A stretch of 64,000 nucleotides of DNA from Marsupella aquatica. Lineage: Eukaryota; Plantae; Marchantiophyta. The stretch covers positions 3,348,480-3,412,479 of the forward strand of contig OZ316898.1 of NCBI GenBank assembly GCA_973895155.1. The letters are read 5' to 3'. Within the stretch, counting starts at the first letter, position 1. Each line of letters starts with the position of its first letter. The notes under the pieces are model-generated. The model made no database searches. It saw nothing but the letters and a program-made list of their open reading frames with translations, and was not told the origin of the DNA. Positions 23,312 to 64,000 of the stretch are shown piece after piece. Made by a program: the position numbers and the translations under genes.

Positions 23312-26300
23312 ATGATGACGTCGAGGAGTTTGAGTCTCGGAAACGAGTTAAGAAGCGCAATGGCAAATCTTGCACCAACTCATTCGCCGTCCTTGAGGAA
23401 GATGGCTTCCATAGATGCGCAGATGCGGCTGCTCGTGCCACGAAAGGTGTCTGAGGATGATAAGCTCATTGAATACGATGCTCTTTTACTCGACCGTTTC
23501 CTGGACATTCTGCAGGAGCTGCACGGCGAGGAAATCAAAGAGACGGTATCAATTTTTCCTGTTTTCTTTCCCACGCAGGCCTGGCAGATGAGTAATGGTA
23601 TTTGTGTAGGTTGTGAGTTGAGGGACGGAGTCAGTTGGCATCGCATCTTGTGTCTTCCCTGCGCAACCAACCAACCGATCAACCCTCTGAATACGATGAA
23701 GAATTCAGCCTTTGGAGACCGTCCAGAATTCCAAATGCACCCAACTTGATGGAATTGTCATGGTTGTAGTGTATAAACAATTCCTGCATTCGACCCCGAG
23801 CCGACCTGGTTCGATCAATTCGAGGTGGGCAGATGGGTGGCTGATCCCTCTCTTTGTCTGAAGCATCCCCTGCGGAGGTTTCAGATGAGAGCAAATCTAG
23901 GACTTGTTGGTGGATTCCCCCTTGCTGATCTGCGTGTTGTTTGGAAATGTATTGTGGTTTTGTACTTGGAGTACATCGTGAGCCGCTCAAACGATTTATT
24001 CTCATATCAATTGATGTTGGCAAAGTTTCATTATCTTTCCTCTCTGCTAATCTCTCTATGGAGGCCACTCGTAGTCTTGTCCCTGACATAAGGTTTCGAT
24101 GGTTTTTTGACGATTCAGGTTCAGAAATGCTACGAGTTGGCTGGACAGTACGGAATGACCGATGGGGAGGGTGACTTAGAAAGACTAGCTGAGCTGAAGG
24201 AGGTTCTCAACAGCCTCGATCCTGGTGACTCCATCGTTGTGGCCAGCTCCTTCTCTCATATGCTCAACTTGGGAAACCTTGCGGAAGAAGTGCAAATTGC
24301 TTACCGTAGAAGAGCCAAGCAAAAGAGGGGTGACCTTGCCGACGAGAATAGTGCTCTGACCGAGTCTGATATTGAAGAGACATTCGGCAGGCTTGTTAAT
24401 CAGTTGGGGAAGTCCCCCATCGAGATTTTTGAAGCCTTGAAGAATCAAACTGTGGACTTGGTTTTGACCGCTCATCCCACGCAGTCCGTTCGACGATCTT
24501 TGCTGCAGAAGTTTTCTAGGTAGGTGTCATCTTGTCAACCCACCAGCTCTGTCATGCATGAAATGGTTTTGAGGCTTTCGATTCAGCCAAATACTGTAGC
24601 CGCAGATGGACCCTCCATCTCGCTGATTCTCAATTTTAGTGTGATCGGGGGGAGATAGGTGCCAAGCAAGGCTATTTTACGAGCCCATCGCCCTGTCCTT
24701 CGTAGTTTTGATGGAGGTGACCTAACCATTAGCGTAGTAGTTGGCTTTAGGTCCTCAGTGTTATCGTCAGTGATCGCGCAGGGACTTGACGATGAACCTC
24801 CACTTCTCAATTGTGCAGGATTCGGAACTGCCTTTCGCAGCTTTATCAAAAGGATATCACTAATGATGAGAAACAAGAACTCGATGAGGCCCTTCAGCGC
24901 GAGGTAACTTATAGAACGGAGAGATGACAGTTTGAATCTGGCGTTTACGAGTACAGTTTGCATGGGGGCTATGTTAATTTTGTCCATGCGTTCAGAAATC
25001 CTTGTTTAGGTCATGAGCTGAAACAGCTAGTTTGTCTTCAGTTGCAGACTTTTCTAGAGTGGGCACCCTTTACTGGCAACAGTGTTATTATGCATCGTCT
25101 CTTGACGGGTGATTTTACGAGTTTGCTTTTCGCTTTGTCTACCAAGCAGATTCAAGCTGCATTCAGAACCGATGAGATTCGTCGGACTGCTCCCACACCC
25201 CAGGATGAGATGCGAGCAGGGATGAGTTACTTCCATGAGACCATTTGGAATGGCCTGCCTAAGTTCCTGCGCCGCGTCGACACGGCGCTGAAGTCTATTG
25301 GTGTCGATGAGAGGCTTCCGTACAATGTTCCCCTCATCCAGTTCTCGTCCTGGATGGGTGGTGATCGAGACGGTGAGTTTTCTAGAGGTCTTAATGACGA
25401 CATGAGTAATTTTCACATCACCAGTGTGAAAATTTGGTACCAATCTGTTGGATTCAAGAATAATGTCTATTCTCAAGTCTTTTCTCGGTTTGTGGACATT
25501 GGTCGTCTAATCAGTAACTCAATCGGGCCTTGTGATTTGTCGTCCAGGTAATCCGAGAGTTACTCCCGAGGTCACCAGAGACGTTTGCCTTCTCGCAAGG
25601 CTGATGGCAGGCAATTTGTATTTTGCCCAGATTGAGGACCTTATGTTCGAGGTATTTGCAGTGCTTTCTTTCGCAGTGTTTTTGGAGTTCAGCCTGTAAT
25701 TCGTTTGGCTTTCGGCAATTTGGATATGATAACCTTTCCTGGAGGAAAATCTGTACTCAAGGCTATAATCATGCGAGCTGTACACAGGAGGAAATGATGA
25801 CCCTAACTAACACAGATACTTGAATGGTGTAGCTGTCCATGTGGCGCTGTAACGACGAGCTTCGGGCTAGAGCCGTTATATTAGAGGCCTTCAACAAGAA
25901 GGATACAAAACATTACATTGGTACGTGTTCTTCATTCTTTACTACTGCGTTTAAATATGTGAAAGTGGCCCAGCTTTTGGGTGTGGTTTCGGACCTACGG
26001 ATGAAGCTCTTTCATGTCCAGTTTGTTAGTGCTTCCTTCCAACTGCTGACAATGTTTTCCAAAGCTGGTCTCTGCTGTAGTGAACACTCAGTGGCTCTGT
26101 GGCCCAGAAATCATGTGATAGGAAAATTCCTGAAGTGAGTACTGGTGGAATTTCTGTCCTGATAAATGACAATACTCTTCTGCTGCAGAATTCTGGAAGC
26201 AGATTCCATCATCTGAGCCATTCCGCGTGGTACTGGGCGATGTCCGTGATAGGTTATTACAGACTAGGGAGAGGATGAGGCAGTTGCTTTCTTCTGGGAA

Positions 26301-28928
26301 GTCGGATATTCCAGATGATGAAACTTTCACGTCTGTGGACCAGGTAAGTTACTATGCCGCTGTCACATGATGCTCTCCCTATGCTTATGCACACGTTAGC
26401 ACTCACCACTGAATTGTTAGCCGTGGGTGAAGTGGTGGATGTCTGCTCTGAGTTGTTGCTTCTCGCTCCCTTGCGTCCCATCTCTGGCCTGAGTGATCTA
26501 TCTTTCTGATCAACTTCTGAGTTCTCTTGCCGCCATTACGCTCCCAAGTGATGATTCAAGCTGTCGATGTTTAGATAGCAACACGATTGGGTAAAGAGTT
26601 GAGTGGGCTGTGCATGCTTGCGCTAGTAATTTTTTGTGTTGTACAATTTTGGCTGTGAGCAGATTTTGGAGCCCCTAGAATTAATGTATAGATCTCTGTG
26701 CGAAACGGGAGATCAACCAATTGCTGATGGCAGTCTACTGGACTTCATGCGGCAAGTTTCATGCTTTGGGCTGTCTCTCGTGAAATTAGACATTAGGCAG
26801 GAGTCGGAGCGCCACACAGACGTAATTGATGCCATCACCAACCATCTGGGGATCGGCTCATACAAGGAATGGGACGAAGACGAGAGACAGCGTTGGCTGT
26901 TACAAGAGCTTCGTGGACGACGCCCATTGTTTGGCTCTGATTTGCCAACTACAGACGAGATCAGGGATGTGCTGGACACGCTTCGAGTGGTCGCTGAACT
27001 TCCTGGAGATTCATTTGGAGCGTACGTCATTTCCATGGCGACATCACCGTCTGATGTCTTGGCGGTTGAACTTCTGCAGCGTGAATGCAGGGTGCCAAAG
27101 CCGCTCCGAGTGGTGCCCTTGTTTGAGAAACTCGATGATCTCAAAGCAGCTCCAGCAGCACTGAGACGTCTTTTTTCGATTGATTGGTACTTGAATAGGA
27201 TCAATGGGAAGCAGGAGGTTATGATTGGGTATTCAGACTCCGGAAAGGACGCAGGAAGGCTCTCTGCTGCATGGGAAATGTTCAAATGCCAAGAGGATCT
27301 GGTGAAAGTTGCCAAAGAGTTTGGCATCAAGTTAACTATGTTTCATGGACGAGGAGGAACAGTTGGTAGGGGTGGAGGCCCCACACATTTGGCCATTCTG
27401 TCTCAACCTCCGGATACGATCCATGGGTCCCTCCGTGTCACAGTTCAAGGAGAGGTCATTGAGCAATCGTTTGGAGAAGAGCATTTGTGCTTTAGAACAC
27501 TGCAACGTTTCACTGCTGCTACATTGGAGCATGGGATGCATCCTCCTCGCGCTCCTCAGCCCAAGTGGCGGGAGCTCATGGACGAAATGGCTAAAGTTGC
27601 AACCGAGGAGTATCGCAATATTGTATTCAAGCATCCTAAATTTGTCGAGTATTTCCGTGCGGTAATTCTCTAGCCCACGTCGCTCAAAACGTGTCCCTTT
27701 GAAACGGTCTTGCTGTCTCTTGCACTCCCATCGTTGGCCTGGTTGAATTTTTGGATTGGCTTCTCACTTCGGCGTCAGCATTGAAGTCTCTGGCAGCCGG
27801 ATTGTTTAAAAAACATTCTCCTTACTTGCCTACTAAGCAACCTTTATCGGTCACCGAACAGGATTTTCTGATCTTTGTTTGGGCACTGCCATATTTTTTT
27901 AGAATTATTTTGTGAATAGAGGGGCTTCCACCTGTGTTAGCAGACAACTTTCCACACCGGAAAAATACATAATGTCTAGTCAACAGCAAGCTGAACATTT
28001 GTGTTCTGTTGGTGGGCTCAAGATAACATAGCATTCATCCTCACAGACTGAACTGCCTCTGAAATTTGCATGAAATAACAATCTAGTGGGTTTTCATATG
28101 CAGGCTACTCCCGAGACGGAGTATGGGCGTATGAACATTGGTAGTCGCCCAGCAAAGAGGAAACCGAGTGGAGGAATTGAGAGTCTTCGAGCTATCCCTT
28201 GGATCTTTGCATGGACCCAGACACGTTTCCATCTTCCAGTGTGGCTGGGATTCGGTGGCGCTTTCAAACATGTCCTTGCAAAAAGTAACTCGAACGTGGT
28301 ATTGCTGCGAGAAATGTACAACGAGTGGCCATTTTTCCGAGTTACCATTGATTTGATTGAGATGGTTTTTGCCAAGGGCGACCCACGTATTGCTGCTTTA
28401 TATGATGAGCTTCTTGTATCCGACGAGCTGAAACCTTTGGGAGAACATCTCAGAGCTATGTATGCTGAGACTAGAGAGCTTCTGTTGAAGGTACTGGGTC
28501 CACATCTTATCTCTAATTATTACCTTGGCTTGCTAGGAGCAGGATTTGACTTGCCTCATGGCTCATCCACCGAGTTTCTAACACCTGGTAAACGCTTTTT
28601 GCAGATTGCCGGCCACGCGGACGTTCTTGCCGGTAATCCTACTCTGAAGCAAAGGCTTAGACTCAGAGAACCATATATCACTCCTCTGAACCTTATACAG
28701 GCTTTCACTCTATGCAAGATCCGAGATCAGAACTTCCATATCACTGAGCAGCCAACCACGCCGAGAGCTGGGGACTCTTCTTCACAGCCAACAACTCCAA
28801 GAGCTGGGGGGAAGCATTCGGCTGAGCTGGTCTCGTTGAACAGGACAACTGAGTACCCACCCGGCCTAGAAGACACACTCATCATTACCATGAAGGGAAT
28901 TGCAGCTGGAATGCAAAATACGGGTTAA
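23312..28928 (+). CDS. PPC: Plant-type phosphoenolpyruvate carboxylase, 10 exons (23312-23545, 24119-24519, 24819-24903, 25150-25372, 25548-25651, 25833-25920, 26189-26343, 26663-27661, 28104-28490, 28605-28928)
   Basis: N-terminal phospho-motif [70 protein letters not shown]-terminal GMQNTG; GT-AG introns with the characteristic 999-bp and 387-bp exons; exact start Met uncertain. Confidence 0.97.
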
Positions 28929-39700: not shown

Positions 39701-40820
39701 GGGAAGAACGAGAAAGCATTACCGCGCAATCGAGGACCATTCATGTCATGGGCTCAATGAAAGGAAACGGTTATGCTTACCGAGATGGATACTGGGCTCG
39801 AGCAAGTCCGGAGAGCGAGTGCTAGTTGGAAGGAATGGAAGGCAAGGTGCGGGCGCTCATTGACACTAGCTCGAAGATCAACTTGATGGATCCAAAGGTG
39901 TTTCAAAAGGGGAATTGGCCGGTGGATAATGAGTTGCTTTGGAGTGTGAACTCGGTGAGTTCAATGAAGGACTATCTTTGGGGCGGATGTCCAAATGTGA
40001 TGGTGAAGTTCGGGAATGTCAAGCAGGCTTGTAACATTTTTGTTCATGAGCACTTGTCATTTCCGGTGATACTGGGCATGCCGTTCACTCGGCCGTTCAT
40101 CACTGAATGGAGGATGGAGACAAAGGTTCTGGATGATACTACCTTCATGGTGAAGGTTTGGGGCAAAGATGATAAGGAGGTGGTTCAGTTTCCAGCGGTT
40201 CTACCTGGAAATGAGAGGAACCGAAAGCGGCTGCGAGATCCAACAGCGGCAGAAGTTGGCATTGCTATGGGGGAGAACCAAGATGCTAAGATGGATCTAA
40301 GTGCAAAGTTCAAAGGGGAGCCAATTGCGGACCGAAAGATGGGGAGTCTAGTGTTCACGGAAGAGTGTTACTTAGGAGAGCTACTGGACATTGGGAAGTA
40401 TCTGAGTGACTTTGGGAAGCGGCTGAAGCAGGATGGTAAAGGGCTCGAAGACATTCGAGTGAATTCTAATAAGTTCGTTCTTAGAGAGGGCTACCTTTGG
40501 CGGAAACCTAAGGGCCCCATGCTAGTACCGAGGAGAGTTGTCGATTCTAAGGATGAGCAAAAGCGGATTTTTGAGGAAGTCTATGATGCTGAGGTCAAAG
40601 GTGGTTTAAAAGGAATAAGGGCGAAGGTCTGTGAGCAGATCCGAAAGGAGTATTGGTGGCCAGATTTGTATTGGGATGTTCAAGAGTATGCTGACAATCG
40701 AGGGATCTATCACAACTTGAAGAGGCAGATTCAAGAGCTTGATCTGATTGACTATCGAGTCGTTGACATACGGGAGAGAGTGAAGGTTTGCAAGGTGCGA
40801 ACTAGAGATGAAATGGACTC
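36708..40820 (+). mobile_element. Truncated, internally deleted Ty3/Gypsy LTR retrotransposon (5' LTR 36708-37518, PBS ~37520, gag-PR)
   Basis: TGTCATG...CACGACA LTR followed by TGGCGACC PBS; gag-like ORFs 37885-39515 with CMWCDNKEHDKREC knuckle; protease ALIDTSS in 39826-41067; YWWPDLYWDV pre-integrase-like segment; no RT/RNase H or 3' LTR seen. Confidence 0.75.
37600..37880. mobile_element. AT-rich MITE inserted between PBS and gag
   Basis: Outer TIR GGGGGGTTGACT / AGTTAACCCCCC and inner IR GGAACCACGTGCAATCC / GGATCGCACGTGGTACC around an AT-rich core. Confidence 0.65.
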
Positions 40821-41548
40821 AAGTTCTGGGCCGACTCAGTGCTCATGCCTAGGCCCTCAGGTCTCATCGCCGCTCGGGGCCCCCGACCGGCCTAACCCGG
40901 ATCGGGCCACAACTTGCGCCCCAAGCGTTCGTTGCCAATGGCGTCAACTCCATTGGCCTTGGGCCCAAGAGGAGCTCACACCCAAGCCCTCAGAACTCAA
41001 GGTCCATGTCGTGCGCATACATATCGCTACACAACATACATCGCTTGTCACATACATCCAGACATAGTCACACTGCCACATCACAAATACAAGAGAATGA
41101 AATACAAGTGGAACTCATGTCCACACATGTCCAAAACCCACAATAATCTCCATACAATCGGCACAACGATCTCGGTCAACAATACCCCATCGATCCCGCA
41201 CCGATCCGATCACACACGTATGTCAAGCCAACGCACCTTGCACTACTCAAGGAATCCACGTTACACAAGCGGAGCTCACAGCCACCATAGCCACACTCAA
41301 GCTCCTCTCTCTCCAAGGCTCAACATTGAAAGATGACCTTTCAATGCCTCACAAGTGAGAAGTACCCTCTCACACAAACCTGATAGAACCTTATCGGCTC
41401 CAATAGCACTCATACCAAACGTACATACTCTAATAGCACGATATACTACCACACTACTTAGAATGGTGTGACATCCATCCGGAGGTCCGGACGGCCATCC
41501 TTGAGCCCGGCCCATTTCCCCTTGACCCGACCAGCCATCGGCTAGTCC

Positions 41549-50819: not shown

Positions 50820-51232
50820 TGTCTTTACAATCTTATCAACTCGAATTGTCCAGCTGCAGCAGCCAACGAGACTTCGATAAACTTACAAATCCTCCGACAA
50901 TTGAATTGCGGCTGGCACAAATCAAACCTCAGTTGCAAAACCCAAAACCCTCAACTGCAGCAACACGAGCCTGCAAGATCACATCAGAACCAAAGCCGGC
51001 GTTTTGTTGCAGCAGGATTCGGACTGAGCTGCAGTAATCCTTTCCTCGCCCAAGAGCAGCACAGATCCGATTCACTAAGAATGGAGGGTTTTCAATTCTC
51101 CCCTTCACTTGTTTTCTTGTTTCGCCAGCATGCAAGGCAACCTCGAATGTGGGAAGACGACCAATCGGAGGTCATCTCTGGAGGCTCCAATTTTGAGACT
51201 GAAATCACCGCTTTGGCAGCTTTATACACTAC

Positions 51233-51673
51233 GGTGAACGGAGGAGTGCCGTGCCAGAAGCTCCCTTGGTGCTTTTTTACTGAGGGCACTTTGGGGCAAG
51301 GTTCCATGGAGGGTTGGTCTGTGGGTACAGATACTCCCACTCCCTCTAGATAGAGGGTGCACTGGTCCAGAGTTTATTTAGTGGAAAAAATTTGCAAAAT
51401 TCCACTAGTGGCACAAGTTTACTACTATTGGCTAATTTACCACTTTGGCAGATTCACACATTAGGGTGAACGGAGGAGTGGCCGCTTGTTATGTCAGAAG
51501 CGACCTTGGTGCTTGTTACTGAGGGCACTTTGGGGCATGGTTCCATGGAGGGTACGTCTGTGGGTGCAGATACTCCCCCTCCCTCTAGACCGGGGGTGCT
51601 GTGGTCCAGTATTTCTTTAGTGATCAATATTTGCCAAATTCCACCTCATTGACAACTTTTCACCACTATTGGC
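51233..51673 (+). repeat. Degenerate tandem duplication, ~232-bp period
   Basis: GGTGAACGGAGGAGTG...TACTGAGGGCACTTTGGGGCA.GGTTCCATGGAGGGT...CAGATACTCCC.CTCCCTCTAGA...CTATTGGC at 51233 and 51465. Confidence 0.85.
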
Positions 51674-52506
51674 AAAAATTGGCCAGGCCTTTTATCTTGG
51701 ATTAGCAAGTTTCCTACCTAGCCACAGTCCCCAATAGCCAGAATCTGACCCTTATCCTTGAATCTAGAAAGATCTAACTATAATGAATTAATCTGTGGAA
51801 ATTAGTTAAGAAATATTATTAGCATCTTTTCCTTACCCTCATGTAGGTCTGTGGCTCTCCCAAGGATTTAAAACATTTGTGAGACAACTGCACCAGCAAC
51901 TGCCATTAGCACATAGTTAGGCTTTCAAGAAACTAGCCCCAGTATCCCTTGTTGATGTAAAGAGAGGTGAAGCTAACAAGGGATATGTAAAGAATAGTTT
52001 ACTAAAAACTTATGCTACCAAGGGCTTTGCTAGTTTGCATCAAGCTTTATAGTATAAACTAGCCTGAGTGCCCAAGCTTGCTCATAAATAGATGGTGAGT
52101 TAATACCATCACGGCTGTTTCCAGTTCACCCCAACCATAGCCACGCTGTAGAAGCACCATCTAGAGGCATCACTCTAGATCCTAAAACCATATCCTTGCT
52201 TGATCCTAGCTTGGTCCTAGTTTATTGGATAGTTGTAACAGATTTCTGGCTTGTGCCGGCCCTGCCATGCTAAATAGTCATTGTCTGCTTGTCGTGACAT
52301 ATAGTATCGTAGCCATAGTGTATCGAAAACATACAAGTCACCAGCAATGCATATGTGCAAGCTGCTAGCAACCAACATCCTGAGAAAAAAGTCCAATCAC
52401 ATTCACAAGTGCCAAGAAAAAGCAACTAAGATGGTATGTACGTAGTGGAGGTGTAAACCTCTGTATCCCCCCCCAGACCACAGTCAAAAGGAGGGCTGAA
52501 GAAAAT

Positions 52507-55500
52507 TCAGGTAGCACGTGGAGCACAGGAAGGGCAAAACCATAACCCTTCTGGCACCTGGGTAAGTTCAGGCCGGAGGCAGAAAAGATGGTACCCTCCA
52601 TTGCAATTGTCACACAGCAACATCTGGTCAGCATCATCAATTCGCAAACACACTTTGCAAGGGTAGTCCATAGGTGGAATCCAAGTAGAAGTCACAATGG
52701 TGGGATCCAGGTTAGGCAGATGACAAGGGGCGCAATTCTTGGCATTGTCAGCAATTGTGCGCCCATCTGCCCCTTGTAACTCTAGCACTCCAGATGGTCG
52801 AATAGCTTTGACCCTGAGAATAGTGCGACTGGTAGAGGTGTCCAGGGTGTCGTTAGCTTGCCGCTGCAAGTACACAAAATCTCCCACTTCAAACTTCCTG
52901 ACCTTGGGCTGAAAAGTGCCCCCTCGTGTGTGTGCATAACGCAGTGTGTCCCTGTGCTGTGCAATGGCCAAATTCTCCATGGCCATGGGCATAACCCTCC
53001 TGAATAGGGCAGCCCTCTCAGAGATCACATCAGACCAAGTCACAGCTGAATCCAAGTCCACCACCTGAAGCATGTGAGAAGCAATAGCAGAAGGTGGAAC
53101 TGGGTGACGACCAAACAACAAGAAGTAGGGAGAAAAGTTAGACAGTGATGCATGTCTGGACATCCTATACCCCATGGCAATGTAGGGTAAGGCCAGGTCC
53201 CAATCCTCCTTGTTTTTGGTGAGGCAGATCTTCCGAAGGCCCTTCTTGCATGTCTGAACCATGCTCTCTGCCAAGCCATCTGCCTGTGGGTGATCTCGTG
53301 ATGTCCGGCGATGATCAATGAGAGCCTGATCAAGCAGCTCCTGGAACTCTCCTCTAAACTCTGAGCCCTGGTCAGTGAGACATTCTGCACAAGCTCCAAA
53401 GCGGCTGAGAACTTGTTGCAAGAATGCCTGGCTGGTGCTACGGGAGGTCTTATCCGGCAATGCCACAAGTTCTATCCACTTGGAGAAATGCTCTATCATG
53501 ATCATGATGTAGAGATTACCCCGAGATGTGAGGGGTAATTCTCCAGCCAAATCACATGACCAACGATAAAACATGCCCTGAATAGGGAGTGGATGAAGTG
53601 TGGGTTGCCGAGATGTGAAAGAAGTCCTTACCCTATCACACTGCTCACACCGGGCAATAACATCTCGAACCTGGCCATGCATGCCTCTCCAATGATAATG
53701 GGGGACCAAGAGGCTATAAGTCCTCTTAACACCAAAATGACCAAGCTCAGAATGTACCTTACGGATAAGGCCAACCCTCTCATGAATGGGTGGAACCACC
53801 ACTTCCCAGTCTGGCAAGCAGCGCACAAGATGATCTCCCTTCCACAAGTAGCGCTTGGACCTTTGCTGAATTTGGTCTCTCTGGGCAGCAGTAACATGGG
53901 TGGGGTACTCCCCATCCTGCAGAAATCTCAGAGTGTCGCTGTCCTCCCATATGTCCACCACAGGTTGGTCAACAATGTAGCATGGCAGCAAAGCAAGATA
54001 GGTAGATGCATGAAATGTAGGCAGGATGGAAACCTGGTCAAAATCCTGCCGTGCATCTAAGGGATCATCAGAGGCAATCAAAGGGCTGCGGGACATAGTG
54101 TCAGCATTTTGATGTGTCACACCAGGCCTATGAATTACCTCAAAATCATACTCCTGGAGTATGAGTGCCCAACGAGCAAGCTTGCCAATAAGCTTGTCGT
54201 TGGTCATCAACCACTTCAAGGGCTGGTGGTCGGTGTAGAGAACAAACCTGGTCCCATAGAGGTAGGGCCTGTAATGTATGACAGCCCACACAATAGCAAG
54301 GCATTCACCCTCATAAGAAGAATAATGACTCTCTGCCTGATTGTTGCTCCTGGATGCATAGGCAATGACGTACTCTTTACCTTCCTCATCATGCTGGCCC
54401 ATAATGGCACCAATCCCAAGGGCACTCCAATCTGTGTGTAGCACAAAGACCTTGTTGAAATCAGGTCTTCTCAACACCGGGTATTCTGAGAGCTTCTCCT
54501 TCAAAGTGGCAAATGCTGCCTCAGCATCTGTACTCCATGTCCAAGTCACATTCTTTTTCAACAAAGCATACAATGGGTGTGCAATGGTACTGAAATCTTT
54601 GATGTAGATCCGGTAGTAATTGCACAACCCAATAAAACTCCTCAAAGTGTGAACATCGGTAGGAGTGGGCATTTCCAAGATGGATACCACCTTGGCCCAG
54701 TGAGCCATGGTTCCATTTGGAAGAATGCGATGCCCAAGATATACTACTGATCTGACAGCAAATTCACACTTCTTGGGGTGTATCTTTAGGTTCACCTTCT
54801 TAAGCCTCATGAATAGCTCCTCAAGGTCAAGTAGATGCTAGTCAAATCCTTTGCTGTGGACCAACACATCATCAATGTAGCATTTCAGAAACTCAGCACC
54901 TTGCAGAACCTGGTCCATGACTCTTTGAAAGAATATGGGCGCATTCTTCAAGCCAAATGGCATCACCAACCACTCCCATAGTTGGTTACTACCATGGAAA
55001 GCTGTTTTCTTGCGATCCTTTGCAAGCAGCAAAATCTGGTTGAAGCCTTGCCTTAGATCCACAAGAGTGAAGATGTCTGAGTCTCCAATGCTGTCAAATA
55101 GCTCCTCTGGCCGCGGCATGGGGTACCTGTCCTAGGGTGTGACCAGGTTCAATGGCCTGTAGTCCCCACACATGCGCTTCTCTGTCCACAATCCACTGTA
55201 ATCCTTCTTTGTTGGCATCACTATAGCTGCCGCAAAATCTGATGTAGATGGCTGAATAAGACCAGCTTCATAAAGCTCTTGGCACCTCTCATCCACCAGC
55301 TGCCACTCATGCTTACTCAAACGGTGTCTTCGCCTAAAGATAGGTGTTTCATCAGCCAACTCAATGGAGAACTGCATAGTCTTGCACTTACCCAAGTCCT
55401 TCATAGAGAAAGCAAACACATTCTCATGCTTGAGGAGCAAATTCAGCAGCTGGTCCTTCTGTCTTTTACTCAGGTGGTTGCCCATGATAAATGTGTAGTT

Positions 55501-58019
55501 GGGAACACTAGGAATAGGATTTGATGTACTCGTGCTTGAAGAGCCAGAAGTGCCAGCCTCTCCACTGTCCGAGCTGCTAGCATGCTGCTGATAAGGTGAT
55601 GAGGCCTCTCCAAGGCCTGCTGTATCTGTTGCTCTGGTCTGATCCACACCATGAAACTTAGAAATAATGTCAGCCACATTACAAGGGACCTCCTCCCCCC
55701 CAACACTTGGACTGAAGCGGTGAGTGTTGAATAGAGGTAAGTGCACGTGGTCTGGATGCCATGTAGCAGCACTGTGGAGGGGTAGGGCTGGAGCTCCTAA
55801 TGCTGGAGGAATGTACATCTGAAAAAGGATGCAAGTGACCAGAAGCCAAGTGAGAGCATTGAGATCCATTACTCTGCCAAGTAAAGCATTCCTGGCCAGC
55901 CTGGTGATTTTGGTGTGACCTGTAGTACCGGGTTGGAAGCCCATAGCCCGTTCTCTCTCCTCAGGACTAGGTTCATCCCATGTACCGGTAGAATGTCGAT
56001 AAACCAGCCCAGGACCATCACCCTGAAAAGCATGTGCACCTGGAAAGGACACAAATGTAGGCCAAGCAGCACGGGGTTGTCCAATGGTATTAGCTGGATA
56101 CCAAGGTGCTGGCTCTTGCCGTGTAACTGGTTGGCAAGAAGTGTTAGGATCCAAAATCTGGTCCACTGTAAGGTTAGTGTCCGTGGATGTGTGTTGAAGA
56201 GCCATCTCCAGCAAGAAGGTGGTGCAAGGTTAGTCCAAAAGTTACGAAGACGATGTGCATAAGAACCATAGTGCACTGCATCAATGAGAAGGGGTGGTCC
56301 CAAGTAGTGTTGGACCACACTGAAATCCTCTTTGACCTGTGGACGTTGGTCAAACTGAGATGGAGTATTCTCAATGATATAACCAATAGCAGGATAAAGG
56401 GATTGAGCCCAGGTGAGAATCTGAACCAATGTTGTGAAAAGGCCAGAACGAGAATCATGCAGTCCAGCACCGTGACCAGCAGCTGAAAACCCTTGGCATT
56501 CCCAACCAACTATGATCAAATCAAGGGAGTCAAGAAGGGTTAAGTGCCGGTGCTGGACAAGCTGGATATCTGGAGGAAAGAAAGAAAATGCAGACTTCCA
56601 TGCACTGTGTGGAAATTGCTGAGGAAATCGCTCTGAAAATTCCAGCAGACGGGATTCAGCCACTTGCCTTGCACTTGGATCAATATCCACATAGATGTAC
56701 TGCTTCACCACCATGCCAGACTTTAGGAGAGCTTCCAGGCCTGTAGAAATGCCACCAAAAAGCTCAAGCAATGTAAGGCCATCTGAAGGAGGAGTCCAGG
56801 TAACTGGTGCGCTCAAGATTGGGGCTATTGGTTGTCCATTATGCTGCCCAAGGTCCTCAAATTTGTGCAATGCAGCCACCAAAGGTCCATGGGCTGCTTG
56901 GAGCCGTTGTACCACCTCTGGTTGATGATCCACGTTGCTGGAAAGTGCTGCTACACGTGCAGCAGCATGTGCAGTAGCCACCTCATCCTCATCCTCCTCA
57001 ATCCAATCCTGCAATGGGTGGTTGACATAGGTAGCTGTGTGCACTGCTTTCAACACACAGTGGTGAGCCATAGGGGTATGGGCACCATGCAAATCAAGTG
57101 GAATGTATCCCAAGTGTGAGCCATCCGTATGCCAATCAACTCTGTAGTATGCATGCTCATGCCAGTTGTCAATGGTAAAACCTGGTGGGAACAAAGCCTC
57201 CTGGCCAATGAGCACATCATACGTAGTGGCATTGGTAACCAAACATCTGACTGGGAAATGCAGTTCCTGATCTGTACCTCCATTAAAAGTGAGAGTGAGT
57301 AAAGTAGAACTCTCACCCAACACGTCCTCCATAGTGCCACTAGCAGTCCGAATGTGCCACCTGGATTGCTGTAAGTGATCAGTCAGCAGTCCCATCTTCT
57401 TGGCAAACTGAATGCCCAATATCACTGGTTGAGCGCCTGTGTCTAGCATGACCACCTGAGGAGTGTGACCCTCCAACTTGACCGCTGAATTCCTGTTGTC
57501 AACAATGGCAATGGTGGTGGAAACTAAAGTCCTGTCACTAGGCACCACTTTTGGCAAATGATGAGGTACCTTGTGAAGGGAGTTAGTGTCCACGGTCTGC
57601 CCACTCAATAGCATAGCCAGGAAAGATGGAGCAGCATGACCAGAATCCAGTGTAGCTCTGGTCACACAATCTGCAGCAATACTATCATCTCTACCACTGG
57701 AAATTGGTACTGGGATAGCCAAACCAGTGGAAGCATGTAATGGAGAAGAAGAAGGTCCAATATGTACATGAGATTGGACCTCCAAAACCGGTGTCACAAG
57801 GGCTGATGAAGAATGCAGTGAGCCCTCTAGCGCTCTGATGACAGCTCTAGCATCCAGCTGTAAATCATGGCAACTGAAAAGTGGAGTTGTAAGAATCCTT
57901 TGTGCCATACCGGAGGTGACATGCTCAAGCAGCTCAGGAGAAACAACTCCCTGTGAAATGTCAGCAACACCTGGTGGTGGAATGGATGTAGCTGCAGCTC
58001 CCTCCCCCCTCGCCAACAA
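52507..58019 (-). pseudogene. pol: pol of the DNMT-Gypsy element (aspartic protease, C5-DNMT, RT, RNase H, integrase, PHD)
   Basis: MLDTGA protease; ELFGG / GWECQGFS / IENT / HRLRNFW DNMT motifs; RMCGDYRPLN, MPFGLKNAP, YIDD RT; LHTDWS...ECLA...YTDH RNase H; HSELGH...CEQC, SCDLAG, LTDQG, QADGLAE integrase; C4HC3 PHD; stops at 55132 and 54838, frameshift near 56214. Confidence 0.92.
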
Positions 58020-59866
58020 GGTGCGCTCTTCAGCATGATAGCCCGAGCTCCCCGGGCTCTAGTCATAGGACCAGCAGCAAGACCATCAGCCTGTACAATG
58101 CGGCGTGTGGGAGCAATACGGGAGGCAGCACTGGCCTGCTGGTAAGCAAAATAAGAAGGGCAGAATGAATCTGAAAATTCTGCTGTAAGGCCAGGCTGTG
58201 GAGTAGAGGACAGCACACACTCACCCATATGAGCATCAAATGGCAAGCCATAGAAAGAGCGGGGTAGAGGTGCTGAACTGTCGGTGGTGCCTGGGCCAAG
58301 GATGGGTTGCACGTGACCAGCCGGTTGAGAAGGACCAGCAGAGGTAGGTGACTTGCCTTTGATGCTGGCAAGTTGGGCACGTAGGGACTCAACCTCATGA
58401 GTCAGAGACTGGAGTTGAGTTTCCTGTGCGTTGTGAGCCTCCTTCTGAGCTGGTGGCTTTTGTTGCTGCTTGGGCAATTTGTTGGCACTGGTTGCTTTGC
58501 CACTGGAAGGAGGAGCAATTGATGCAGTAGGAGCCCTTCTAGCTAGTGGGGGAGTGGAAGCAGGAGCAGGAGGAGGGGCCTGCTGTCGTAGCTGCTTCCT
58601 CTCTGGAAATTTGGCAAAACAAATTGCCTCCAAGTGGCCCACTTTCCCGCAAAACTCACAAGACAGGTCCTCAGCAACAATATCACATTCATTAGCCTTG
58701 TGATTAGGATTGCCACAGTAGTTGCAAGATGGCAGCATGAAAGCAGCATGTGCTGGTTTGGGCTTGGAAGCATACTGTGGCACACGGGAAGGGGTGGCCA
58801 TTGTAGGGGCAGTAGCCTGGTACCTAGATTGTGGTGGACGCGCAATACTGGCCTCATAATGTGCATGGGCCAATTCAAGTTTCTCAGCAGTGTCATAGAC
58901 ATTGAGCAAGGTGTAGCTGTCTCCAAACTCTGAGAATACTTGCTGCAACACCTGCGAATTGAGAGCTGGTGTGCCCTCCAATGCGCGAAGATAGCGATGA
59001 GCAGCTTCCAGGTCAGTGATGCTCTGGGTGTCCTCCTTCAGCTTGAGAAGCCGGCGATACATCATCTTCAAGGTTTCATTGCGCTGCCTCACAAAGGTGG
59101 CCAACTGCATGATTTTGTCAGCACTCTTGATTGGGAATTCCAATTCAAGAACCTGGAAAAACTCAGCCACTGGATCAGCAAAGGCAGGGGAATCAATGGT
59201 GGGAGAAATGCCTGATGTAGCCTGTGCCAAGATAGTGGGAGTAACTGGCGCAATGGTAGGAACTGGAGTAGGAGGGGAAGTGGCAGGAGCAGCAGCATGG
59301 GCTGCAATGGCATTCTGTAATGCCAATTGTGAGGCAGCCACAATTGCACTGGCATAGGCAGGGTTAGGCAATTGTGTGACAACAAGCAGCCGTTGAGAGT
59401 GCTGCTCATACACATCCAAAGCCTCGTGGTGCACATACCTGGCTAGCTGCTTAAATGCAAAAGCATTTGTGAAATTGCTGCCGTACTTCAACTCCAATTC
59501 GTAAACGATAGTGTAGAAAGTGGATTTGAACTCATGTAAAGAAACAGTGCCTGGCCGCCCGCTGAAGCGTTCAATGCGGCCAGATGAGTGGCTGGCGTCC
59601 ATGCTGTATGTTGGTGAAGCAGGAACAACCACGGATGCAGAAGGGGTAAATGGTAAAGATGTAATAGCAGGCTTCGGGGTAGGGGTGAAGCGACCGCCCA
59701 ATGTAGCAGCAGGATGGCGTGATGTGGGTGTTGCTGCTGTCTGCTGACGTCATCGAAATTGCCGAGACTCCAATGAAATTGGCACCAATGGTCGTGGATC
59801 ACTCCGCAAGTGGTACCTGGGTATCAGTGGCGATGAGCTGCTACCTCCCGGCTCGTCGGCTGACAT
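57827..59866 (-). pseudogene. gag: gag of the DNMT-Gypsy element (two CCHC zinc knuckles)
   Basis: ATG at 59866 (MSADEPGG...RYHLRS) is in frame with ORF 57827-59701 after a TGA at 59752-59750; CNYCGNPNHKANEC and CEFCGKVGHLEAIC. Confidence 0.85.
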
Positions 59867-60369: not shown

Positions 60370-60875
60370 TGTGCATAGGGCTTCGCACCCCCCTCCGTAT
60401 GAGCTCCTGAAGCCTCCTTGGGGCTTCGTGCCCTGGCAGGCCTAAGTACTCCCGTGTGAGGGAGTTCGAATTGAACTCCCCTCCCCTCCTTTAATGCAGC
60501 TTAGGGCCTTGTGCCCTCTCCTGGCACTCTCGCTCCCCCTCCTGGCCTCCTTTTATTGCAGCATAGGGCCTCGTGCCCACTCCTTGCGCTCCTGCTCCCC
60601 TCCTCCTGGCTTTAATTCTCCATAGGGCTTCGTGCCCTCCTTGCGCTTCTGCTCCCCTCCTCCTGGCTTTAATTCTCCATAGGGCTTCGTGCCCTCCTTG
60701 CGCTTCCCCCTCCCCTCCGTGGCTGGTACTCGGCTCCCCCCCTCCCTCCTCTTTAATGCGGGACCTGGCAGCATGACTCCCGAGAGAGAGGGAGTCGTAT
60801 GTACTCCCGAGAAGGGAGTCGACTTAACTCCCCTCTCCTCCTTAATTATACAGCATAGGGCCGTGTGCCCCCTCC
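60370..60875. repeat. Tandem ~58-bp repeats within the putative LTR/leader of the DNMT-Gypsy element
   Basis: Recurrent CATAGGGC(T/C)TCGTGCCC...CTCCCCTCCTCCTGGC...TTAAT units; two near-identical copies at ~60562-60700. Confidence 0.8.
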
Positions 60876-62038
60876 CTCTCGACTGTCGCTTTGTATTCGG
60901 CGTAACAAGAAAAGTGGCGTGCGACCCTATGAAGGGCGCCGAGCAGCCGAGGAGCAAGGACGGGGGAAAGAGAGGAACCAGGCGGCGGTCGACCGGAAGA
61001 AAGAAAATGGGAGGAAAAGGGGCAAACGCATTAATTCAAAGCGAGGGCGCAGCAGCCGGAAGCAATCCGTGGCAGCAGATAGGCAGTGACAGTAGCGGGA
61101 TTAGCAGGTCAAAGAAGATTGTGGCCGGAAACGAAAAACCCAGGCCTCCCAAGGGAGTGTTATGTGTATACACTTAAGTATACACATAACACCACAATAA
61201 ACCCATAACTTTTAACTCGTCACTCCGATGTCCGTCGAAGAAATTGCAATGGCTTCACCAGAAATTGTCGAAATCGTCACGAGCAATCTTCTTCCCTTCA
61301 CCACTATCTCGGCAGTTCTTCTTGAATAAAAGGCGTGATAGAAACAAACGTACTGAAATCGAATCGAAAACCGGCGAGATGCCAAGATCGGCTGGGAGCA
61401 TCTAACGAATCACTGTGTGAATTCCGTGTACGGAACCGACGAGCAGCCTCTGAAAAACTCTGTCTCACAGCGACTCAAGAAGAACTGAAGAACGGCAAAG
61501 AAAAACATGCCCTAAGTAGGACCGGGTCCAGGCGTCACACTAACAAACCCCTTTTGCTTCAAGAACAGCCCAGACTCGCTACAAGAACGTGACACTAACT
61601 CAAGTAGTACACTAGCCCTAACCATACCTAGCGGGCATGCGAGGGACATGCCGATGTGCACAAGCGGCACTGTCACTCGGCATGACATGCTTGTTTCAGG
61701 GCAGTTTCAGTTTATGTTGTGGGTGCCCAAATGCATCTCCATGCTAGCCAAATTGCATCCACTTCTGAGAATGCACCACATGTTGCAACTGTCATGCTCT
61801 GGAAATCCCCCCCTACACACCTGCTTGCTGGTTGTCAACTACAAGGCAAACTACAAGGCACAAAAGGGCTAGCCCAACTGTGAAGCAAGGGCAATTCACT
61901 ATCATTTTCTGAAAACAATTGTATTTGTGGTGGGTTGTTAGACTCTTAGGGTTGAGTACCTATGAATCCCCATAATTATTCAAAACTTAGAAGTCACACG
62001 CACAGTATGTGTTTTCTATAAATCTAAGAGACCATTGC

Positions 62039-62165
62039 ACTGACCCACCAAATCAGTTTCGGAAACCAAAATTCACTGATTCCCATCATATGTCTTTACT
62101 AGAAGTCTAAGCAAATATTTTACTGACCCACCAAATCAGTTTGGGGAACCACAATTCACTGATCC
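62039..62165 (+). repeat. ~44-bp direct repeat, 83 bp apart
   Basis: ACTGACCCACCAAATCAGTTT(C/G)GG(A/G)AACCA(A/C)AATTCACTGAT at 62039 and 62122. Confidence 0.8.
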
Positions 62166-62344
62166 CTAGGCTGGGCCATTCCTGCATGGGGACCAGTTCT
62201 CGCTATCATGAAAATGAGAATAAAATATATAATAATTACTATCCATTCGCATTGTGTGCAGTACTAACAAAGGTGAAGAGTGAATGATGGGGTCCCCCAA
62301 AGCTCCACACTATGACATTCCATCAAATGAGAACAAATGTGCTT

Positions 62345-62550: not shown

Positions 62551-64000
62551 TGTGCACTAAACTGTAGTGTATGAAAGTGGCCATCACCTTTGCTTCAGAT
62601 GGAGAGACCATGAAGGGGGCCACGAGGGGTCTCCATAACCGCACATCAAAATATGACATATATTGTGTTTCATATCCCTCCAAGAAAAACTAGTTATTTG
62701 CTTTAAATCAATGAGTAACACCAGCCTTAAGTCTAGGGGGGTCACTTCCATGGAAGTGGCATATCATGTGCGACGAAATATAGGACCATTTAAATGGTTT
62801 TGACGGAAAATTTATTAAGTCTTCTATGGAAATATATGGTTGTTTAATTGTAAAATGTATACATGTTATCACATGATTGGTGCCGTACAACTTTCTAGAA
62901 AGTGACTTAGGGGGGTCATAAATGACCCAAACCGTCGCACGTGATGTATGACCCTTCATATAATGACCCCCCCCCGAGCTTTAAGTGCCAATTTTAGCCC
63001 AATACCACCTCCCCCAAAAATGTTCACCACTTTTGGCTAATATAGGCTAGATGTTTTTAGCACCATTAGCCACTCTTCCACCAAATCATGAACCCTATTA
63101 GCCAGAATCTAATGGTCCTCCTTAAATCTAGGGATATCTGACCGTCATGATGCAATTCAGTAAAATCATGATGCAATTGAGTAAAATCTGATGGATTCAG
63201 TAAAATCTGATGGAGAACATTCCTAGAATCTCCTCCCTTAGAGAAACAAACATTGGTCACACTGGATTAAAAAAAAACAAATAAAAAACCAATTGGCTAG
63301 GGGATTGGCCTTGAACTTCTTCCCCATTTCGGAACTTCTTCCCCATTTCGGTTCAAGACAAAACAAAAGATAAAAATAAAAAACCTTAAATAGGCACCTT
63401 GTACTAGTACATTTTGATGTGTGTGATTAGGCAGGGGCCCATAAGGAGGGCAATCAGGAGTGACAGCACCATCTTGTAAAGCCCCTAGCATCTTTTAAAG
63501 GACACTGAGGAGCGACATTGGAGCATTTATTTTCCTTCCTCTTACGTGAATGAAAACACCGAGGAGAACCCTAATTGTAGCGGGCAAGGGTGCTTGGAGT
63601 AATGGAATCACAGGGACAGAGGATTGCGCGTGTAGGAATTGCGCGACATGAAGAGTTTCAACAAAGATTATTTGGGATTGAAGACACAGAATTGTAATTA
63701 GACTCGGAATTGTAGTGCACGCCGGAGATGCGCGAGTCTTCAAGACGTGATCCGTAACTTATCGAGGAGATATTGGAATTCTAGAGACAATTCGGCGATT
63801 TTCGTTTGGAGGAACTTTTGTTGGCTTCAGCTTTGAGTCATAGTTGAGATTTTTCAATTTCGTGCGCGGAGGAAGAGAATCTGCTTGTTAAGAGACTCTC
63901 GCTCGTCGAGAAATCACCAAGAATCGGCAGAGCGGAGCGAGAGGCGTTTGACTAACGTGGAACGCTCCTGAAAATTTGAAGGGGAAGGGGCCTTTAAAGC

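What the first reader, a model, noticed from the sequence alone, without database searches (positions are those of the whole stretch)
55850..56780. Ty3/Gypsy retrotransposon with a full C5-cytosine DNA methyltransferase embedded in pol, in a land-plant genome
Seen: between the protease (MLDTGA, ~57440) and RT (RMCGDYRPLN...YIDD) lies a domain with the canonical C5-MTase motif order. Motif I is LLELFGGIS, II VDID, III DI, IV GWECQGFSAAG (catalytic Cys kept) followed by D.RS.LF, VI IENT and VIII HRLRNFW. After one frameshift come a TRD, motif IX PEERERAMGFQ and motif X LLGRVM. Established: DNMT-carrying retrotransposons have been described in dinoflagellates and in Gypsy elements of the charophyte alga Klebsormidium; I know of no characterised example in land plants. 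Inference: this is an embryophyte member or independent analogue of that system. The element could methylate its own cDNA or integration site, for self-silencing, host mimicry or protection, without relying on host MET1/CMT/DRM.
Basis: partly seen in the sequence, partly recalled or inferred. Interest (0 to 1): 0.93.

Follow-up and report, generated by a model that had tools for sequence, protein, structure and literature searches.

The report
Dead Gypsy retrotransposon carrying DNMT3-like methyltransferase
This is a broken copy of a jumping gene whose polyprotein includes its own DNMT3-type DNA-methylating enzyme. That kind of element was described in 2018 in a freshwater alga; here it turns up, abundant and conserved, in a liverwort-type land-plant genome, although this particular copy can no longer make the enzyme.

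Summary
On the minus strand, 59,866-52,507 is one Ty3/Gypsy-type polyprotein: gag, protease, C5-methyltransferase, RT, RNase H, integrase, PHD finger.

The N-half passes Pfam PF00145's cut-off. An intact relative about 75% identical folds with high confidence, and its best PDB matches are DNMT3A/B/C. Across diverged copies the domain shows dN/dS of 0.04-0.13.

This copy is dead. It has three premature stops and two frame breaks, one of them in the middle of the methyltransferase, and no terminal repeats could be found. Other copies in four public runs lack the three lesions within the stretch I laid reads on, so the family is abundant and was recently active.

The closest named relative is in the liverwort Calypogeia fissa, and more distant ones are in Closterium. 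Three relatives have the unusual A-coding-B-A-B repeats reported for the Klebsormidium Gypsy-DNMT3.

I file it as a new member of a known kind. Its occurrence in a land plant was not found in the papers I could search. This scan has already flagged the same family elsewhere in this genome. What the enzyme does for the element remains inference.

The parts
52507..59866 (-). Whole coding span of the element. It was once a single gag-PR-MTase-RT-RH-INT-PHD reading frame and is now in five pieces.
   Evidence: ORFs; Pfam. The relative L004 reads the same span as one frame with a single stop. DNA homology to L003-L006 runs from 59,815 to 52,459.
58031..59866 (-). gag, with a CCHC zinc knuckle at about 58,729-58,682. 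The start codon is at 59,866.
   Evidence: PF00098; 62-66% identity to gag of L003-L005; start found by alignment with L004.
59750..59752 (-). Premature stop in the N-terminal part of gag.
   Evidence: Translation. L004 has a sense codon here.
58028..58031 (-). Frame break between gag and protease, with about 7 residues missing relative to L004.
   Evidence: Frame-by-frame alignment to L004. Contigs of other copies diverge at 58,033 (table 7).
57192..57482 (-). Aspartic protease (MLDTGA at 57,449-57,432).
   Evidence: PF13975 at 28.7 bits and PF13650.
56214..56771 (-). Methyltransferase N-half, motifs I to VIII (FGG, VDID, GWECQ with the catalytic Cys, ENT, RLR).
   Evidence: PF00145 at 27.5 bits against a cut-off of 22; DNMT3A best in PDB; 74-76% identity to L003-L005; landmarks.
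56214..56215 (-). One-base frame change inside the methyltransferase, between motif VIII and the target-recognition region.
   Evidence: Reading of both frames. Contigs of other copies in X1, X2 and X5 have one more base here (table 4).
55837..56211 (-). Methyltransferase C-half: target-recognition region, motif IX (EERERAMGF) and motif X (LLGRVM).
   Evidence: Colinear with intact relatives; 79-84% identity. The same stretch of L005 aligns to DNMT3A motifs IX-X.
54538..55500 (-). Reverse transcriptase (GDYRPLN ... YIDD).
   Evidence: PF00078 at E 1.4e-16; 83-84% identity to relatives, dN/dS 0.03-0.05.
55132..55134 (-). Premature stop in RT.
   Evidence: It is a sense codon in L005 and in all other copies seen in the runs (table 3, place 55134).
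54838..54840 (-). Second premature stop in RT.
   Evidence: It is a sense codon in L005 and in the other copies in the runs (place 54840).
54148..54537 (-). RNase H.
   Evidence: PF17917 at E 1.2e-37 and PF17919.
53287..53790 (-). Integrase (H2C2 zinc finger plus the rve core).
   Evidence: PF17921 and PF00665.
52525..52659 (-). PHD finger at the integrase C-terminus, where chromoviruses carry a chromodomain.
   Evidence: PF00628 at E 1.3e-11. Best PDB matches are WSTF, CHD4, KDM5, BAZ2A/B, ATXR5, AIRE and UHRF1 PHD fingers.

Best explanation
The region is the methyltransferase domain of a dead copy of a 'Gypsy-DNMT3' retrotransposon. This is a Ty3/Gypsy-type element whose single polyprotein (gag, protease, DNMT3-like catalytic domain, RT, RNase H, integrase, PHD finger) carries its own C5 cytosine methyltransferase.

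Shown:
- The domain is a non-permuted DNMT3-type catalytic domain without the PWWP and ADD modules of host DNMT3.
- It is an integral, vertically inherited part of the element family.
- It has evolved under purifying selection, about as strong as on the protease.
- The family is abundant in the genomes that hold this sequence.
- The family occurs in a liverwort and in Closterium.
- This copy is inactivated by three stops and two frame breaks, one of them within the enzyme. At least three of these lesions are private to this copy.

Inferred for intact copies: the enzyme is translated as part of Gag-Pol. In this clade there is no stop at all before RT; in two other clades it lies upstream of a leaky-type TAG. 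It would therefore travel with the particle or pre-integration complex and methylate DNA de novo. The most likely substrate is the element's own new cDNA or insertion, with the integrase PHD finger (of the class that reads unmodified histone H3 tails) choosing the chromatin. The benefit to the element would be a quick, self-imposed quiet state or mimicry of host marking.
For: - Domain identity: PF00145 above the cut-off. A family profile scores DNMT3A 6e-23, DNMT3B 7e-19, tobacco DRM 4e-14 and M.HhaI 1.5e-9.
- Fold: the model of the intact relative L005:5101-6123 has pLDDT 94.8 and pTM 0.93. The listed Foldseek PDB matches (31 rows, down to rank 50) are all DNMT3A/B/C, at E 8e-18 to 1e-14, target TM 0.8, about 325 aligned columns.
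- Catalytic residues: the catalytic Cys is invariant and the E-N of motif VI nearly invariant across 36 aligned sequences (33 diverse relatives, L005 and the window's two halves); the R-x-R of motif VIII is in the alignment consensus.
- Part of the element: same position and same frame in L004, which is one frame from gag to PHD with a single stop, and in L005, L003, L006 and L002.
- Selection: dN/dS is 0.04-0.13 for the methyltransferase, 0.11-0.12 for the protease, 0.03-0.05 for RT and 0.2-0.34 for the linkers.
- Abundance and private lesions: 3,459 contigs were laid in X1, 1,186 of them at 99% or better. The other copies lack the two RT stops and the 56,214 frame change.
- Taxa: Calypogeia fissa at 76% and Closterium at 33-35%. 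The window groups with Calypogeia with 100% support.
- Link to the described family: A-coding-B-A-B repeats in L003, L005 and L006, as stated for KnitGypsy-Dnmt3 in PMC5890265. That paper also reports a weak motix X-equivalent (weak motif X) and Ka/Ks below 0.2.
- Long-term methylation of the element: CpG observed/expected is 0.28, against 0.59 for the rest of the window.
Against: - I had no Klebsormidium sequence, so membership of that exact lineage rests on shared architecture and repeats, not on a tree.
- Motif IV reads E-C-Q instead of the usual P-C-Q in most of the family, and motif X is weak.
- De Mendoza et al. detected no activity for the Klebsormidium domain in yeast, and called that result inconclusive. 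DNA methylation by this family is therefore unproven.
- dS is saturated in most comparisons, so the dN/dS values are rough.
- No terminal repeats or target-site duplication could be found for this copy, so its ends are undefined.
- No RNA run holding the sequence was found.
Confidence: 0.85

Rival explanations
1. Independent analogue: liverwort Gypsy elements captured a host DNMT3 on their own, separately from the Klebsormidium elements.
For: De Mendoza et al. show that DNMT3 capture has happened more than once, in two Symbiodinium DIRS lineages and in Klebsormidium Gypsy. In my tree the PR-MTase-RT sequences form several deep lineages joined by weak deep branches. No Klebsormidium sequence was available.
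Against: The same insertion point between protease and RT is found in Closterium and in liverwort-type copies. Relatives also share a C-terminal PHD finger and the rare A-coding-B-A-B repeats reported for KnitGypsy-Dnmt3. All the methyltransferase domains, including the chlorophyte ones, find each other far ahead of DNMT3A.
Confidence: 0.12
2. The domain is no longer a DNA methyltransferase. It is kept as a DNA- or chromatin-binding module, or it acts on RNA or on the RNA-DNA hybrid during reverse transcription.
For: Glu replaces the canonical Pro before the catalytic Cys in most members, and motif X is degenerate. The Klebsormidium domain gave no methylation in yeast.
Against: The catalytic Cys is invariant and the E-N of motif VI nearly invariant; the R-x-R of motif VIII and the E-R-E of motif IX are in the alignment consensus. 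The fold matches the whole DNMT3 catalytic domain. The yeast test was also negative for human DNMT3B, so the authors called it inconclusive.
Confidence: 0.2
3. Artefact: a host DNMT3 pseudogene next to an unrelated Gypsy insertion, algal contamination, or a misassembly.
For: This copy has no detectable terminal repeats, and its frames are broken on both sides of the domain.
Against: Relatives read straight through protease, methyltransferase and RT in one frame. Contigs from four runs of three organisms cover the whole stretch without a break at the domain borders. A plant-type, intron-containing PEPC gene lies 25 kb away on the same contig. Base composition is even along the window.
Confidence: 0.02

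Closest known systems
KnitGypsy-Dnmt3 of Klebsormidium nitens (de Mendoza et al. 2018, Nat Commun 9:1341, PMC5890265)
   Same: Both are Gypsy-type pol with an intronless, non-permuted DNMT3-like catalytic domain inside the polyprotein. Both have a weak motif X and purifying selection (Ka/Ks below 0.2). Relatives of this copy have the DIRS-like A-coding-B-A-B repeats that the paper reports.
   Different: The host is a liverwort-type land plant rather than a charophyte alga. The position of the domain in the Klebsormidium element, and whether that element has a PHD finger, are not given in the text I could read. No direct sequence comparison was possible. This copy is dead and lacks the repeats.
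Host DNMT3A/DNMT3B (animals) and plant DNMT3/DRM
   Same: Same fold and same motif order as DNMT3A/B/C, including the DNMT3-type strings LF.GI.TG, AHR.R.FW.NL and RLAR..LLGR.
   Different: No PWWP or ADD domain. About 55 residues longer than the DNMT3A catalytic domain. Motif IV reads E-C-Q rather than P-C. It is not circularly permuted as DRM is. It is embedded in a retrotransposon polyprotein.
SymbioDIRS-Dnmt3 of Symbiodinium (same paper)
   Same: A DNMT3-type domain inside Pol and split direct repeats. Two of those domains methylate CG de novo in yeast, which shows that such a domain can be active.
   Different: Those are tyrosine-recombinase DIRS elements of dinoflagellates, with an unrelated RT lineage.
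PHD-bearing Gypsy elements of green algae, such as Gypsy-7a_cRei of Chlamydomonas (PMC9940879)
   Same: Gypsy pol with a PHD finger and LTRs made of subparts.
   Different: No methyltransferase is described there. The PHD finger lies before the integrase in that element and after it here.
Chlorophyte RT-RH-MTase-INT-PHD polyproteins (Haematococcus, Monoraphidium, Chromochloris, Tetradesmus, Hariotina)
   Same: Same methyltransferase family (about 40-47% identity), same Gypsy-type pol and same C-terminal PHD finger.
   Different: The methyltransferase lies between RNase H and integrase rather than between protease and RT. They form one group in the methyltransferase tree.

Membership tests
C5 cytosine DNA methyltransferase (PF00145), DNMT3 type | Significant match to the family model | tested here: met
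   The window N-half scores 27.5 bits and L005 scores 31.2 bits, against a cut-off of 22. The family profile scores 84.6 bits (E 6e-23) against DNMT3A.
C5 cytosine DNA methyltransferase (PF00145), DNMT3 type | Motifs I, IV (catalytic Cys), VI (ENV), VIII (RxR), IX and X in the unpermuted order, with a target-recognition region between VIII and IX | tested here: met
   All are located in order. The Cys is invariant in 36 sequences. Deviations: E-C-Q in place of P-C-Q, and a weak motif X. In the window the series is split by a frame change after motif VIII.
C5 cytosine DNA methyltransferase (PF00145), DNMT3 type | Fold of the DNMT3 catalytic domain | tested here: met
   Tested on the intact relative L005 (about 75% identical), not on the broken window copy. 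pLDDT is 94.8. DNMT3B/A/C are the top matches at E about 1e-17 and TM 0.70/0.82.
C5 cytosine DNA methyltransferase (PF00145), DNMT3 type | N-terminal PWWP and ADD reader domains of host DNMT3 | tested here: not met
   No such Pfam domains in any piece. The domain is flanked by protease and RT.
C5 cytosine DNA methyltransferase (PF00145), DNMT3 type | Methylates cytosine in DNA | not testable with these tools
   Needs an enzyme assay. The published test of the Klebsormidium domain was inconclusive.
Gypsy-DNMT3 retrotransposons (KnitGypsy-Dnmt3) | DNMT3-like domain inside the Pol reading frame of a Gypsy-type element, without introns | tested here: met
Gypsy-DNMT3 retrotransposons (KnitGypsy-Dnmt3) | DIRS-like split direct repeats (A-coding-B-A-B) | tested here: inconclusive
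   Present in the relatives L003, L005 and L006 at 90-100% identity. Not found in the window copy.
Gypsy-DNMT3 retrotransposons (KnitGypsy-Dnmt3) | Purifying selection on the methyltransferase between copies (Ka/Ks below 0.2) | tested here: met
   0.04-0.13 against L003, L004, L005 and L006. dS is saturated.
Gypsy-DNMT3 retrotransposons (KnitGypsy-Dnmt3) | Groups with the Klebsormidium elements in RT and methyltransferase trees | not tested
   No Klebsormidium sequence came back from any search. The named relatives are Calypogeia and Closterium.
Ty3/Gypsy LTR retrotransposon | Domain order gag(CCHC)-PR-RT-RH-INT with Gypsy-type RNase H and an H2C2 integrase | tested here: met
   PF00098, PF13975, PF00078, PF17917/PF17919, PF17921 and PF00665, in that order.
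Ty3/Gypsy LTR retrotransposon | Two long terminal repeats, target-site duplication, primer-binding site and polypurine tract | tested here: not met
   No repeat pair flanks this copy. Relatives have split repeats rather than plain LTRs. I did not search for a primer-binding site or polypurine tract.

The most novel reading that the evidence does not exclude
The DNMT3-carrying, PHD-tailed Gypsy elements are one ancient clade that runs from chlorophyte algae to liverworts. Within it the methyltransferase has moved once inside pol, from between protease and RT to between RNase H and integrase (or the reverse). The clade is still transposing in liverworts. The enzyme and the integrase PHD finger, which is of the unmodified-H3-tail reader type, work together as a self-marking module that writes 5mC on new insertions independently of host MET1, CMT and DRM.
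Probability: 0.25. Interest if true: 0.75.

Novelty: new member of a known kind. Interest (0 to 1): 0.45.

Why it matters
Retrotransposons that carry the very enzyme hosts use to silence them are a rare and poorly understood twist in the host-transposon conflict. So far the published cases I could find are dinoflagellates, one charophyte alga and a few other algae.

Finding the family abundant, recently amplified and under selection in a liverwort-type genome puts it in land plants, which have tractable models and methylome tools. The question 'what does a transposon gain from its own DNMT3?' therefore becomes testable.

This particular copy adds little by itself, because it is broken. Its value is as a marker of the family, and it shows decay by stops that arose at CG or CHG cytosines.

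Tried and rejected
- Terminal repeats of this copy: the repeat finder, blastn at word sizes 14, 11, 9 and 7, and Smith-Waterman of both flanks found none. The only hit is a 212-nt stretch at 65% identity (51,616-51,827 against 62,981-63,189). That is far too diverged for a copy whose segments match other copies at 99% or better, so I rejected it as a terminal repeat.
- C-half alone against Pfam and PDB: nothing. It was placed by alignment to intact relatives instead.
The single stops of L004 and L005 lie inside the target-recognition region and inside RT and are ordinary nonsense changes. An in-frame TAG in a leaky-type context does exist in two other lineages, L007 and L008.
- Naming the host: organism names of the runs are coded. 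No repeats are shared with the Calypogeia locus outside the element. Rfam found no marker RNA. The PEPC exon is plant-type only.
- Named relatives among long polyproteins of this clade: the search with P0187 returned only unnamed metagenome or assembly proteins.
- Klebsormidium sequences: none were retrieved, and the 2018 paper's supplements hold no sequences.
- Other copies in the window: none.
- I did not repair the frame or join the two halves with real letters. The tree row for the window used X at the break.
Full report
WHAT IS THERE

The finding lies on the minus strand inside a run of long open reading frames. Pfam identifies them, in order, as follows:
- gag with a CCHC knuckle
- an aspartic protease
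- PF00145 C5 DNA methylase (27.5 bits against a curated cut-off of 22)
- reverse transcriptase
- Gypsy-type RNase H
- H2C2 and rve integrase
- a C-terminal PHD finger

Motif I is at 56,771-56,745, GWECQ at 56,507-56,484, ENT at 56,378-56,364 and HRLRNFW at 56,255-56,235. After a frame change at 56,214/56,215 come motif IX at 55,962-55,936 and motif X at 55,884-55,867.

WHAT KIND OF METHYLTRANSFERASE

The window's N-half finds DNMT3A as its best solved relative. I did not repair the frame. Instead I searched the pieces apart and looked for natural intact relatives.

A HMMER scan of 1.84 billion representative proteins with the N-half gave 1,775 hits at E<1e-3 and 115 at E<1e-30. Many of these are polyproteins of 1,600-3,400 residues. 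A locus from a public assembly, L005, reads gag, protease, a complete methyltransferase and the start of RT in one frame. Its 341-residue domain is 74-80% identical to the window's two halves (73% and 77% by alignment A1) and colinear with them across the break.

Results for that domain:
- It passes PF00145 (31.2 bits).
- It matches DNMT3A in two stretches, one of which covers motifs IX-X.
- With a 36-sequence alignment it folds at pLDDT 94.8 and pTM 0.93.
- All Foldseek PDB matches listed (31 rows, down to rank 50) are DNMT3B, 3A or 3C catalytic domains, at E 8e-18 to 1e-14, TM 0.70 by query and 0.82 by target, over about 325 columns.
- A profile of the family scores DNMT3A 6e-23, DNMT3B 7e-19, tobacco DRM 4e-14 and M.HhaI 1.5e-9. 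No DNMT1-type chain is listed at E up to 1e-3.

The catalytic Cys is invariant in the alignment and the E-N of motif VI nearly so; the R-x-R of motif VIII and the E-R-E of motif IX appear in its consensus. Two features are unusual. Motif IV reads E-C-Q rather than P-C-Q in most members, and motif X is weak. The 2018 paper also notes the weak motif X for the Klebsormidium elements. There is no PWWP or ADD domain.

THE DOMAIN BELONGS TO THE ELEMENT

The same order, with the methyltransferase between protease and RT, is found in:
- L003, from the liverwort Calypogeia fissa (NCBI GCA_965154635.1)
- L004, L005, L006 and the more distant L002
- Closterium proteins

L004 reads from the gag start to the PHD finger as one frame of about 2,490 codons, with a single stop inside the target-recognition region. 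The family's normal state is therefore a single gag-pol frame that includes the enzyme.

Codon comparisons of the window with L003-L006 give these dN/dS values:
- methyltransferase: 0.04-0.13
- protease: 0.11-0.12
- RT: 0.03-0.05
- linkers: 0.2-0.34

dS is saturated, so the ratios are rough, but the ranking by dN is clear.

Laying Logan contigs of four runs (three coded organisms) on 54,700-58,100 placed thousands of short contigs. X1 alone gave 3,459, of which 1,186 were at 99% or better, and they covered every bin including the methyltransferase. This rules out a one-off insertion, contamination or a chimera. It also shows that the family is abundant and amplified recently.

THIS COPY IS DEAD

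It has five lesions:
- a stop in gag at 59,750-59,752
- a frame break with a small deletion at about 58,030
- the one-base frame change in the methyltransferase at 56,214/56,215
- a stop in RT at 55,132-55,134
- a stop in RT at 54,838-54,840

Other copies in the runs do not share the two RT stops or the 56,214 frame change. Their contigs also diverge at 58,033. These lesions are therefore private to this copy.

The three stops sit where relatives have sense codons. Each differs from the relative's codon only at a cytosine in a CG or CHG site. The element's CpG observed/expected ratio is 0.28, against 0.59 for the rest of the window and 0.68 for the nearby PEPC gene. Both observations fit long-standing methylation of the family.

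I could find no terminal repeats for this copy, so its ends are undefined.

RELATION TO WHAT IS KNOWN

De Mendoza et al. 2018 (PMC5890265) described DNMT3-like domains inside Pol of a Gypsy element of Klebsormidium nitens. Those domains are intronless, have Ka/Ks below 0.2, and sit in elements with 'the structure of repeats ... of a DIRS retrotransposon'. Three relatives of the window copy show exactly that arrangement, A-coding-B-A-B:
- L003: A is 450 nt at 99.3% identity and B is 164 nt at 100%.
- L005: A is 447 nt at 99.8% and B is 285 nt at 100%.
- L006: the repeats are at 90-92%.

I take this, together with the shared weak motif X and the selection, as good but indirect evidence that the liverwort-type elements belong to the same kind. 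I had no Klebsormidium sequence for a direct test.

The 2018 survey included only Physcomitrella, Selaginella and angiosperms among land plants. A 2026 preprint speaks of 'streptophytes (Gypsy-DNMT3)' without further detail. Full-text searches found no paper describing such elements in bryophytes. This scan has already noted the same family at several other places in this genome, and I treated those notes as leads only.

HOST

No tool names the organism. Four things bear on it:
- The closest named relative of the element is in Calypogeia fissa, an embryophyte of the Marchantiophyta. In the methyltransferase tree the window groups with it at 100% support.
- DNA identity to that locus is only 72-78%, and no other repeats are shared. 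The window is therefore not shown to be that species.
- A plant-type PEPC gene with introns lies at 24.9-28.9 kb.
- Earlier notes of this scan call the genome liverwort-type. I did not verify this.

HOW IT PROBABLY WORKS

Shown: the enzyme is made as part of the polyprotein, upstream of RT.

Inferred: after protease cleavage, or while still fused, it travels with the particle or pre-integration complex and methylates DNA de novo. The nearest experimental support is that two Symbiodinium DIRS-borne DNMT3 domains methylate CG in yeast, while the Klebsormidium domain gave an inconclusive negative.

The integrase PHD finger is most similar to the WSTF, CHD4, KDM5, BAZ2, ATXR5, AIRE, BHC80 and UHRF1 fingers. 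From my own knowledge, these read the unmodified H3 tail. That would steer insertion, and perhaps the enzyme, to chromatin lacking H3K4 methylation, much as the ADD domain does for host DNMT3. This is a hypothesis, not a result.

WIDER PICTURE, SEEN IN PASSING

Among the 278 retrieved proteins that match the methyltransferase profile (of 281 held at that point), two architectures occur. About 47 have the enzyme before RT, as here. About 164 have it between RNase H and integrase. The rest show the methyltransferase alone.

The second type carries names from chlorophyte algae: Haematococcus, Monoraphidium, Chromochloris, Tetradesmus (from transcripts) and Hariotina. In the methyltransferase tree it falls into one group with 84% support, apart from one row.

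In two other lineages of the first type, L007 and L008, an in-frame TAG separates the methyltransferase from RT. The contexts are TAG-CAG-TTA and TAG-CAA-TCA. The window's clade has no such stop.

VERDICT

I file it as a new member of a known kind, of moderate interest. The family deserves study in bryophytes. This locus is a decayed example.

Noticed in passing
window 52,525-52,659 (-): The integrase ends in a PHD finger instead of a chromodomain. Its best solved relatives (WSTF, CHD4, KDM5 PHD1, BAZ2A/B, ATXR5, AIRE, BHC80, UHRF1) are, to my knowledge, readers of the unmodified H3 tail. The PHD finger is kept in both architectures of the family.
   Followed up: partly
proteins P0006, P0009, P0023, P0039, P0043, P0255, P0261, P0112, P0207, P0222; locus L001: The same methyltransferase family sits at a second position in pol (RT-RH-MTase-INT-PHD) in chlorophyte algae: Haematococcus, Monoraphidium, Chromochloris, Tetradesmus and Hariotina. 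These sequences form one group in the methyltransferase tree. I found no paper describing these elements.
   Followed up: partly
L007:4459-4470 and L008:6000-6011: Two other lineages with the PR-MTase-RT order have an in-frame TAG between methyltransferase and RT, followed by CAG-TTA or CAA-TCA. This is the context known for leaky stops in tobamoviruses. The window, L004 and L005 have no stop there.
   Followed up: partly
L003:5283-5732, 15031-15805; L005:1-447, 8518-9658; L006:1138-1454, 10509-11111: Relatives carry split direct repeats in the order A-coding-B-A-B rather than plain LTRs, although they encode a DDE integrase. How such ends are regenerated is unexplained.
   Followed up: partly
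window 52,507-59,866: The element is strongly CpG-depleted (observed/expected 0.28, against 0.59 for the rest of the window). Each of its three premature stops differs from the relatives' sense codon only at a CG or CHG cytosine, as deamination of methylated cytosine would produce.
   Followed up: partly
window 24,958-28,928 (+): A plant-type phosphoenolpyruvate carboxylase gene in several exons. The largest exon scores 640 bits against the best-matching solved plant-type PEPC chain (8ojq, 'Phosphoenolpyruvate carboxylase 1') and 350 bits against the bacterial-type chain 1fiy.
   Followed up: partly
window 39,826-41,064 (+): A 413-residue ORF with a weak integrase H2C2 match. It is probably the remnant of a different retrotransposon and is not similar to the element studied here.
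   Followed up: no
window 60,443-60,875; 51,207-51,673; 62,006-62,166: Short tandem-like repeats (80-86% identity) lie on both sides of the element. None is shared between the two sides. The 60.4-60.9 kb block lies in what would be the 5' untranslated region.
   Followed up: no
window 51,616-51,827 and 62,981-63,189: A 212-nt similarity at 65% identity, unique within the window, lies on either side of the element. It is too diverged to be its terminal repeat, and its origin is unexplained.
   Followed up: partly
runs X7-X10: Air-metagenome runs hold a small share (about 0.1) of the element's words. This could come from airborne spores or fragments of the host or of relatives.
   Followed up: no
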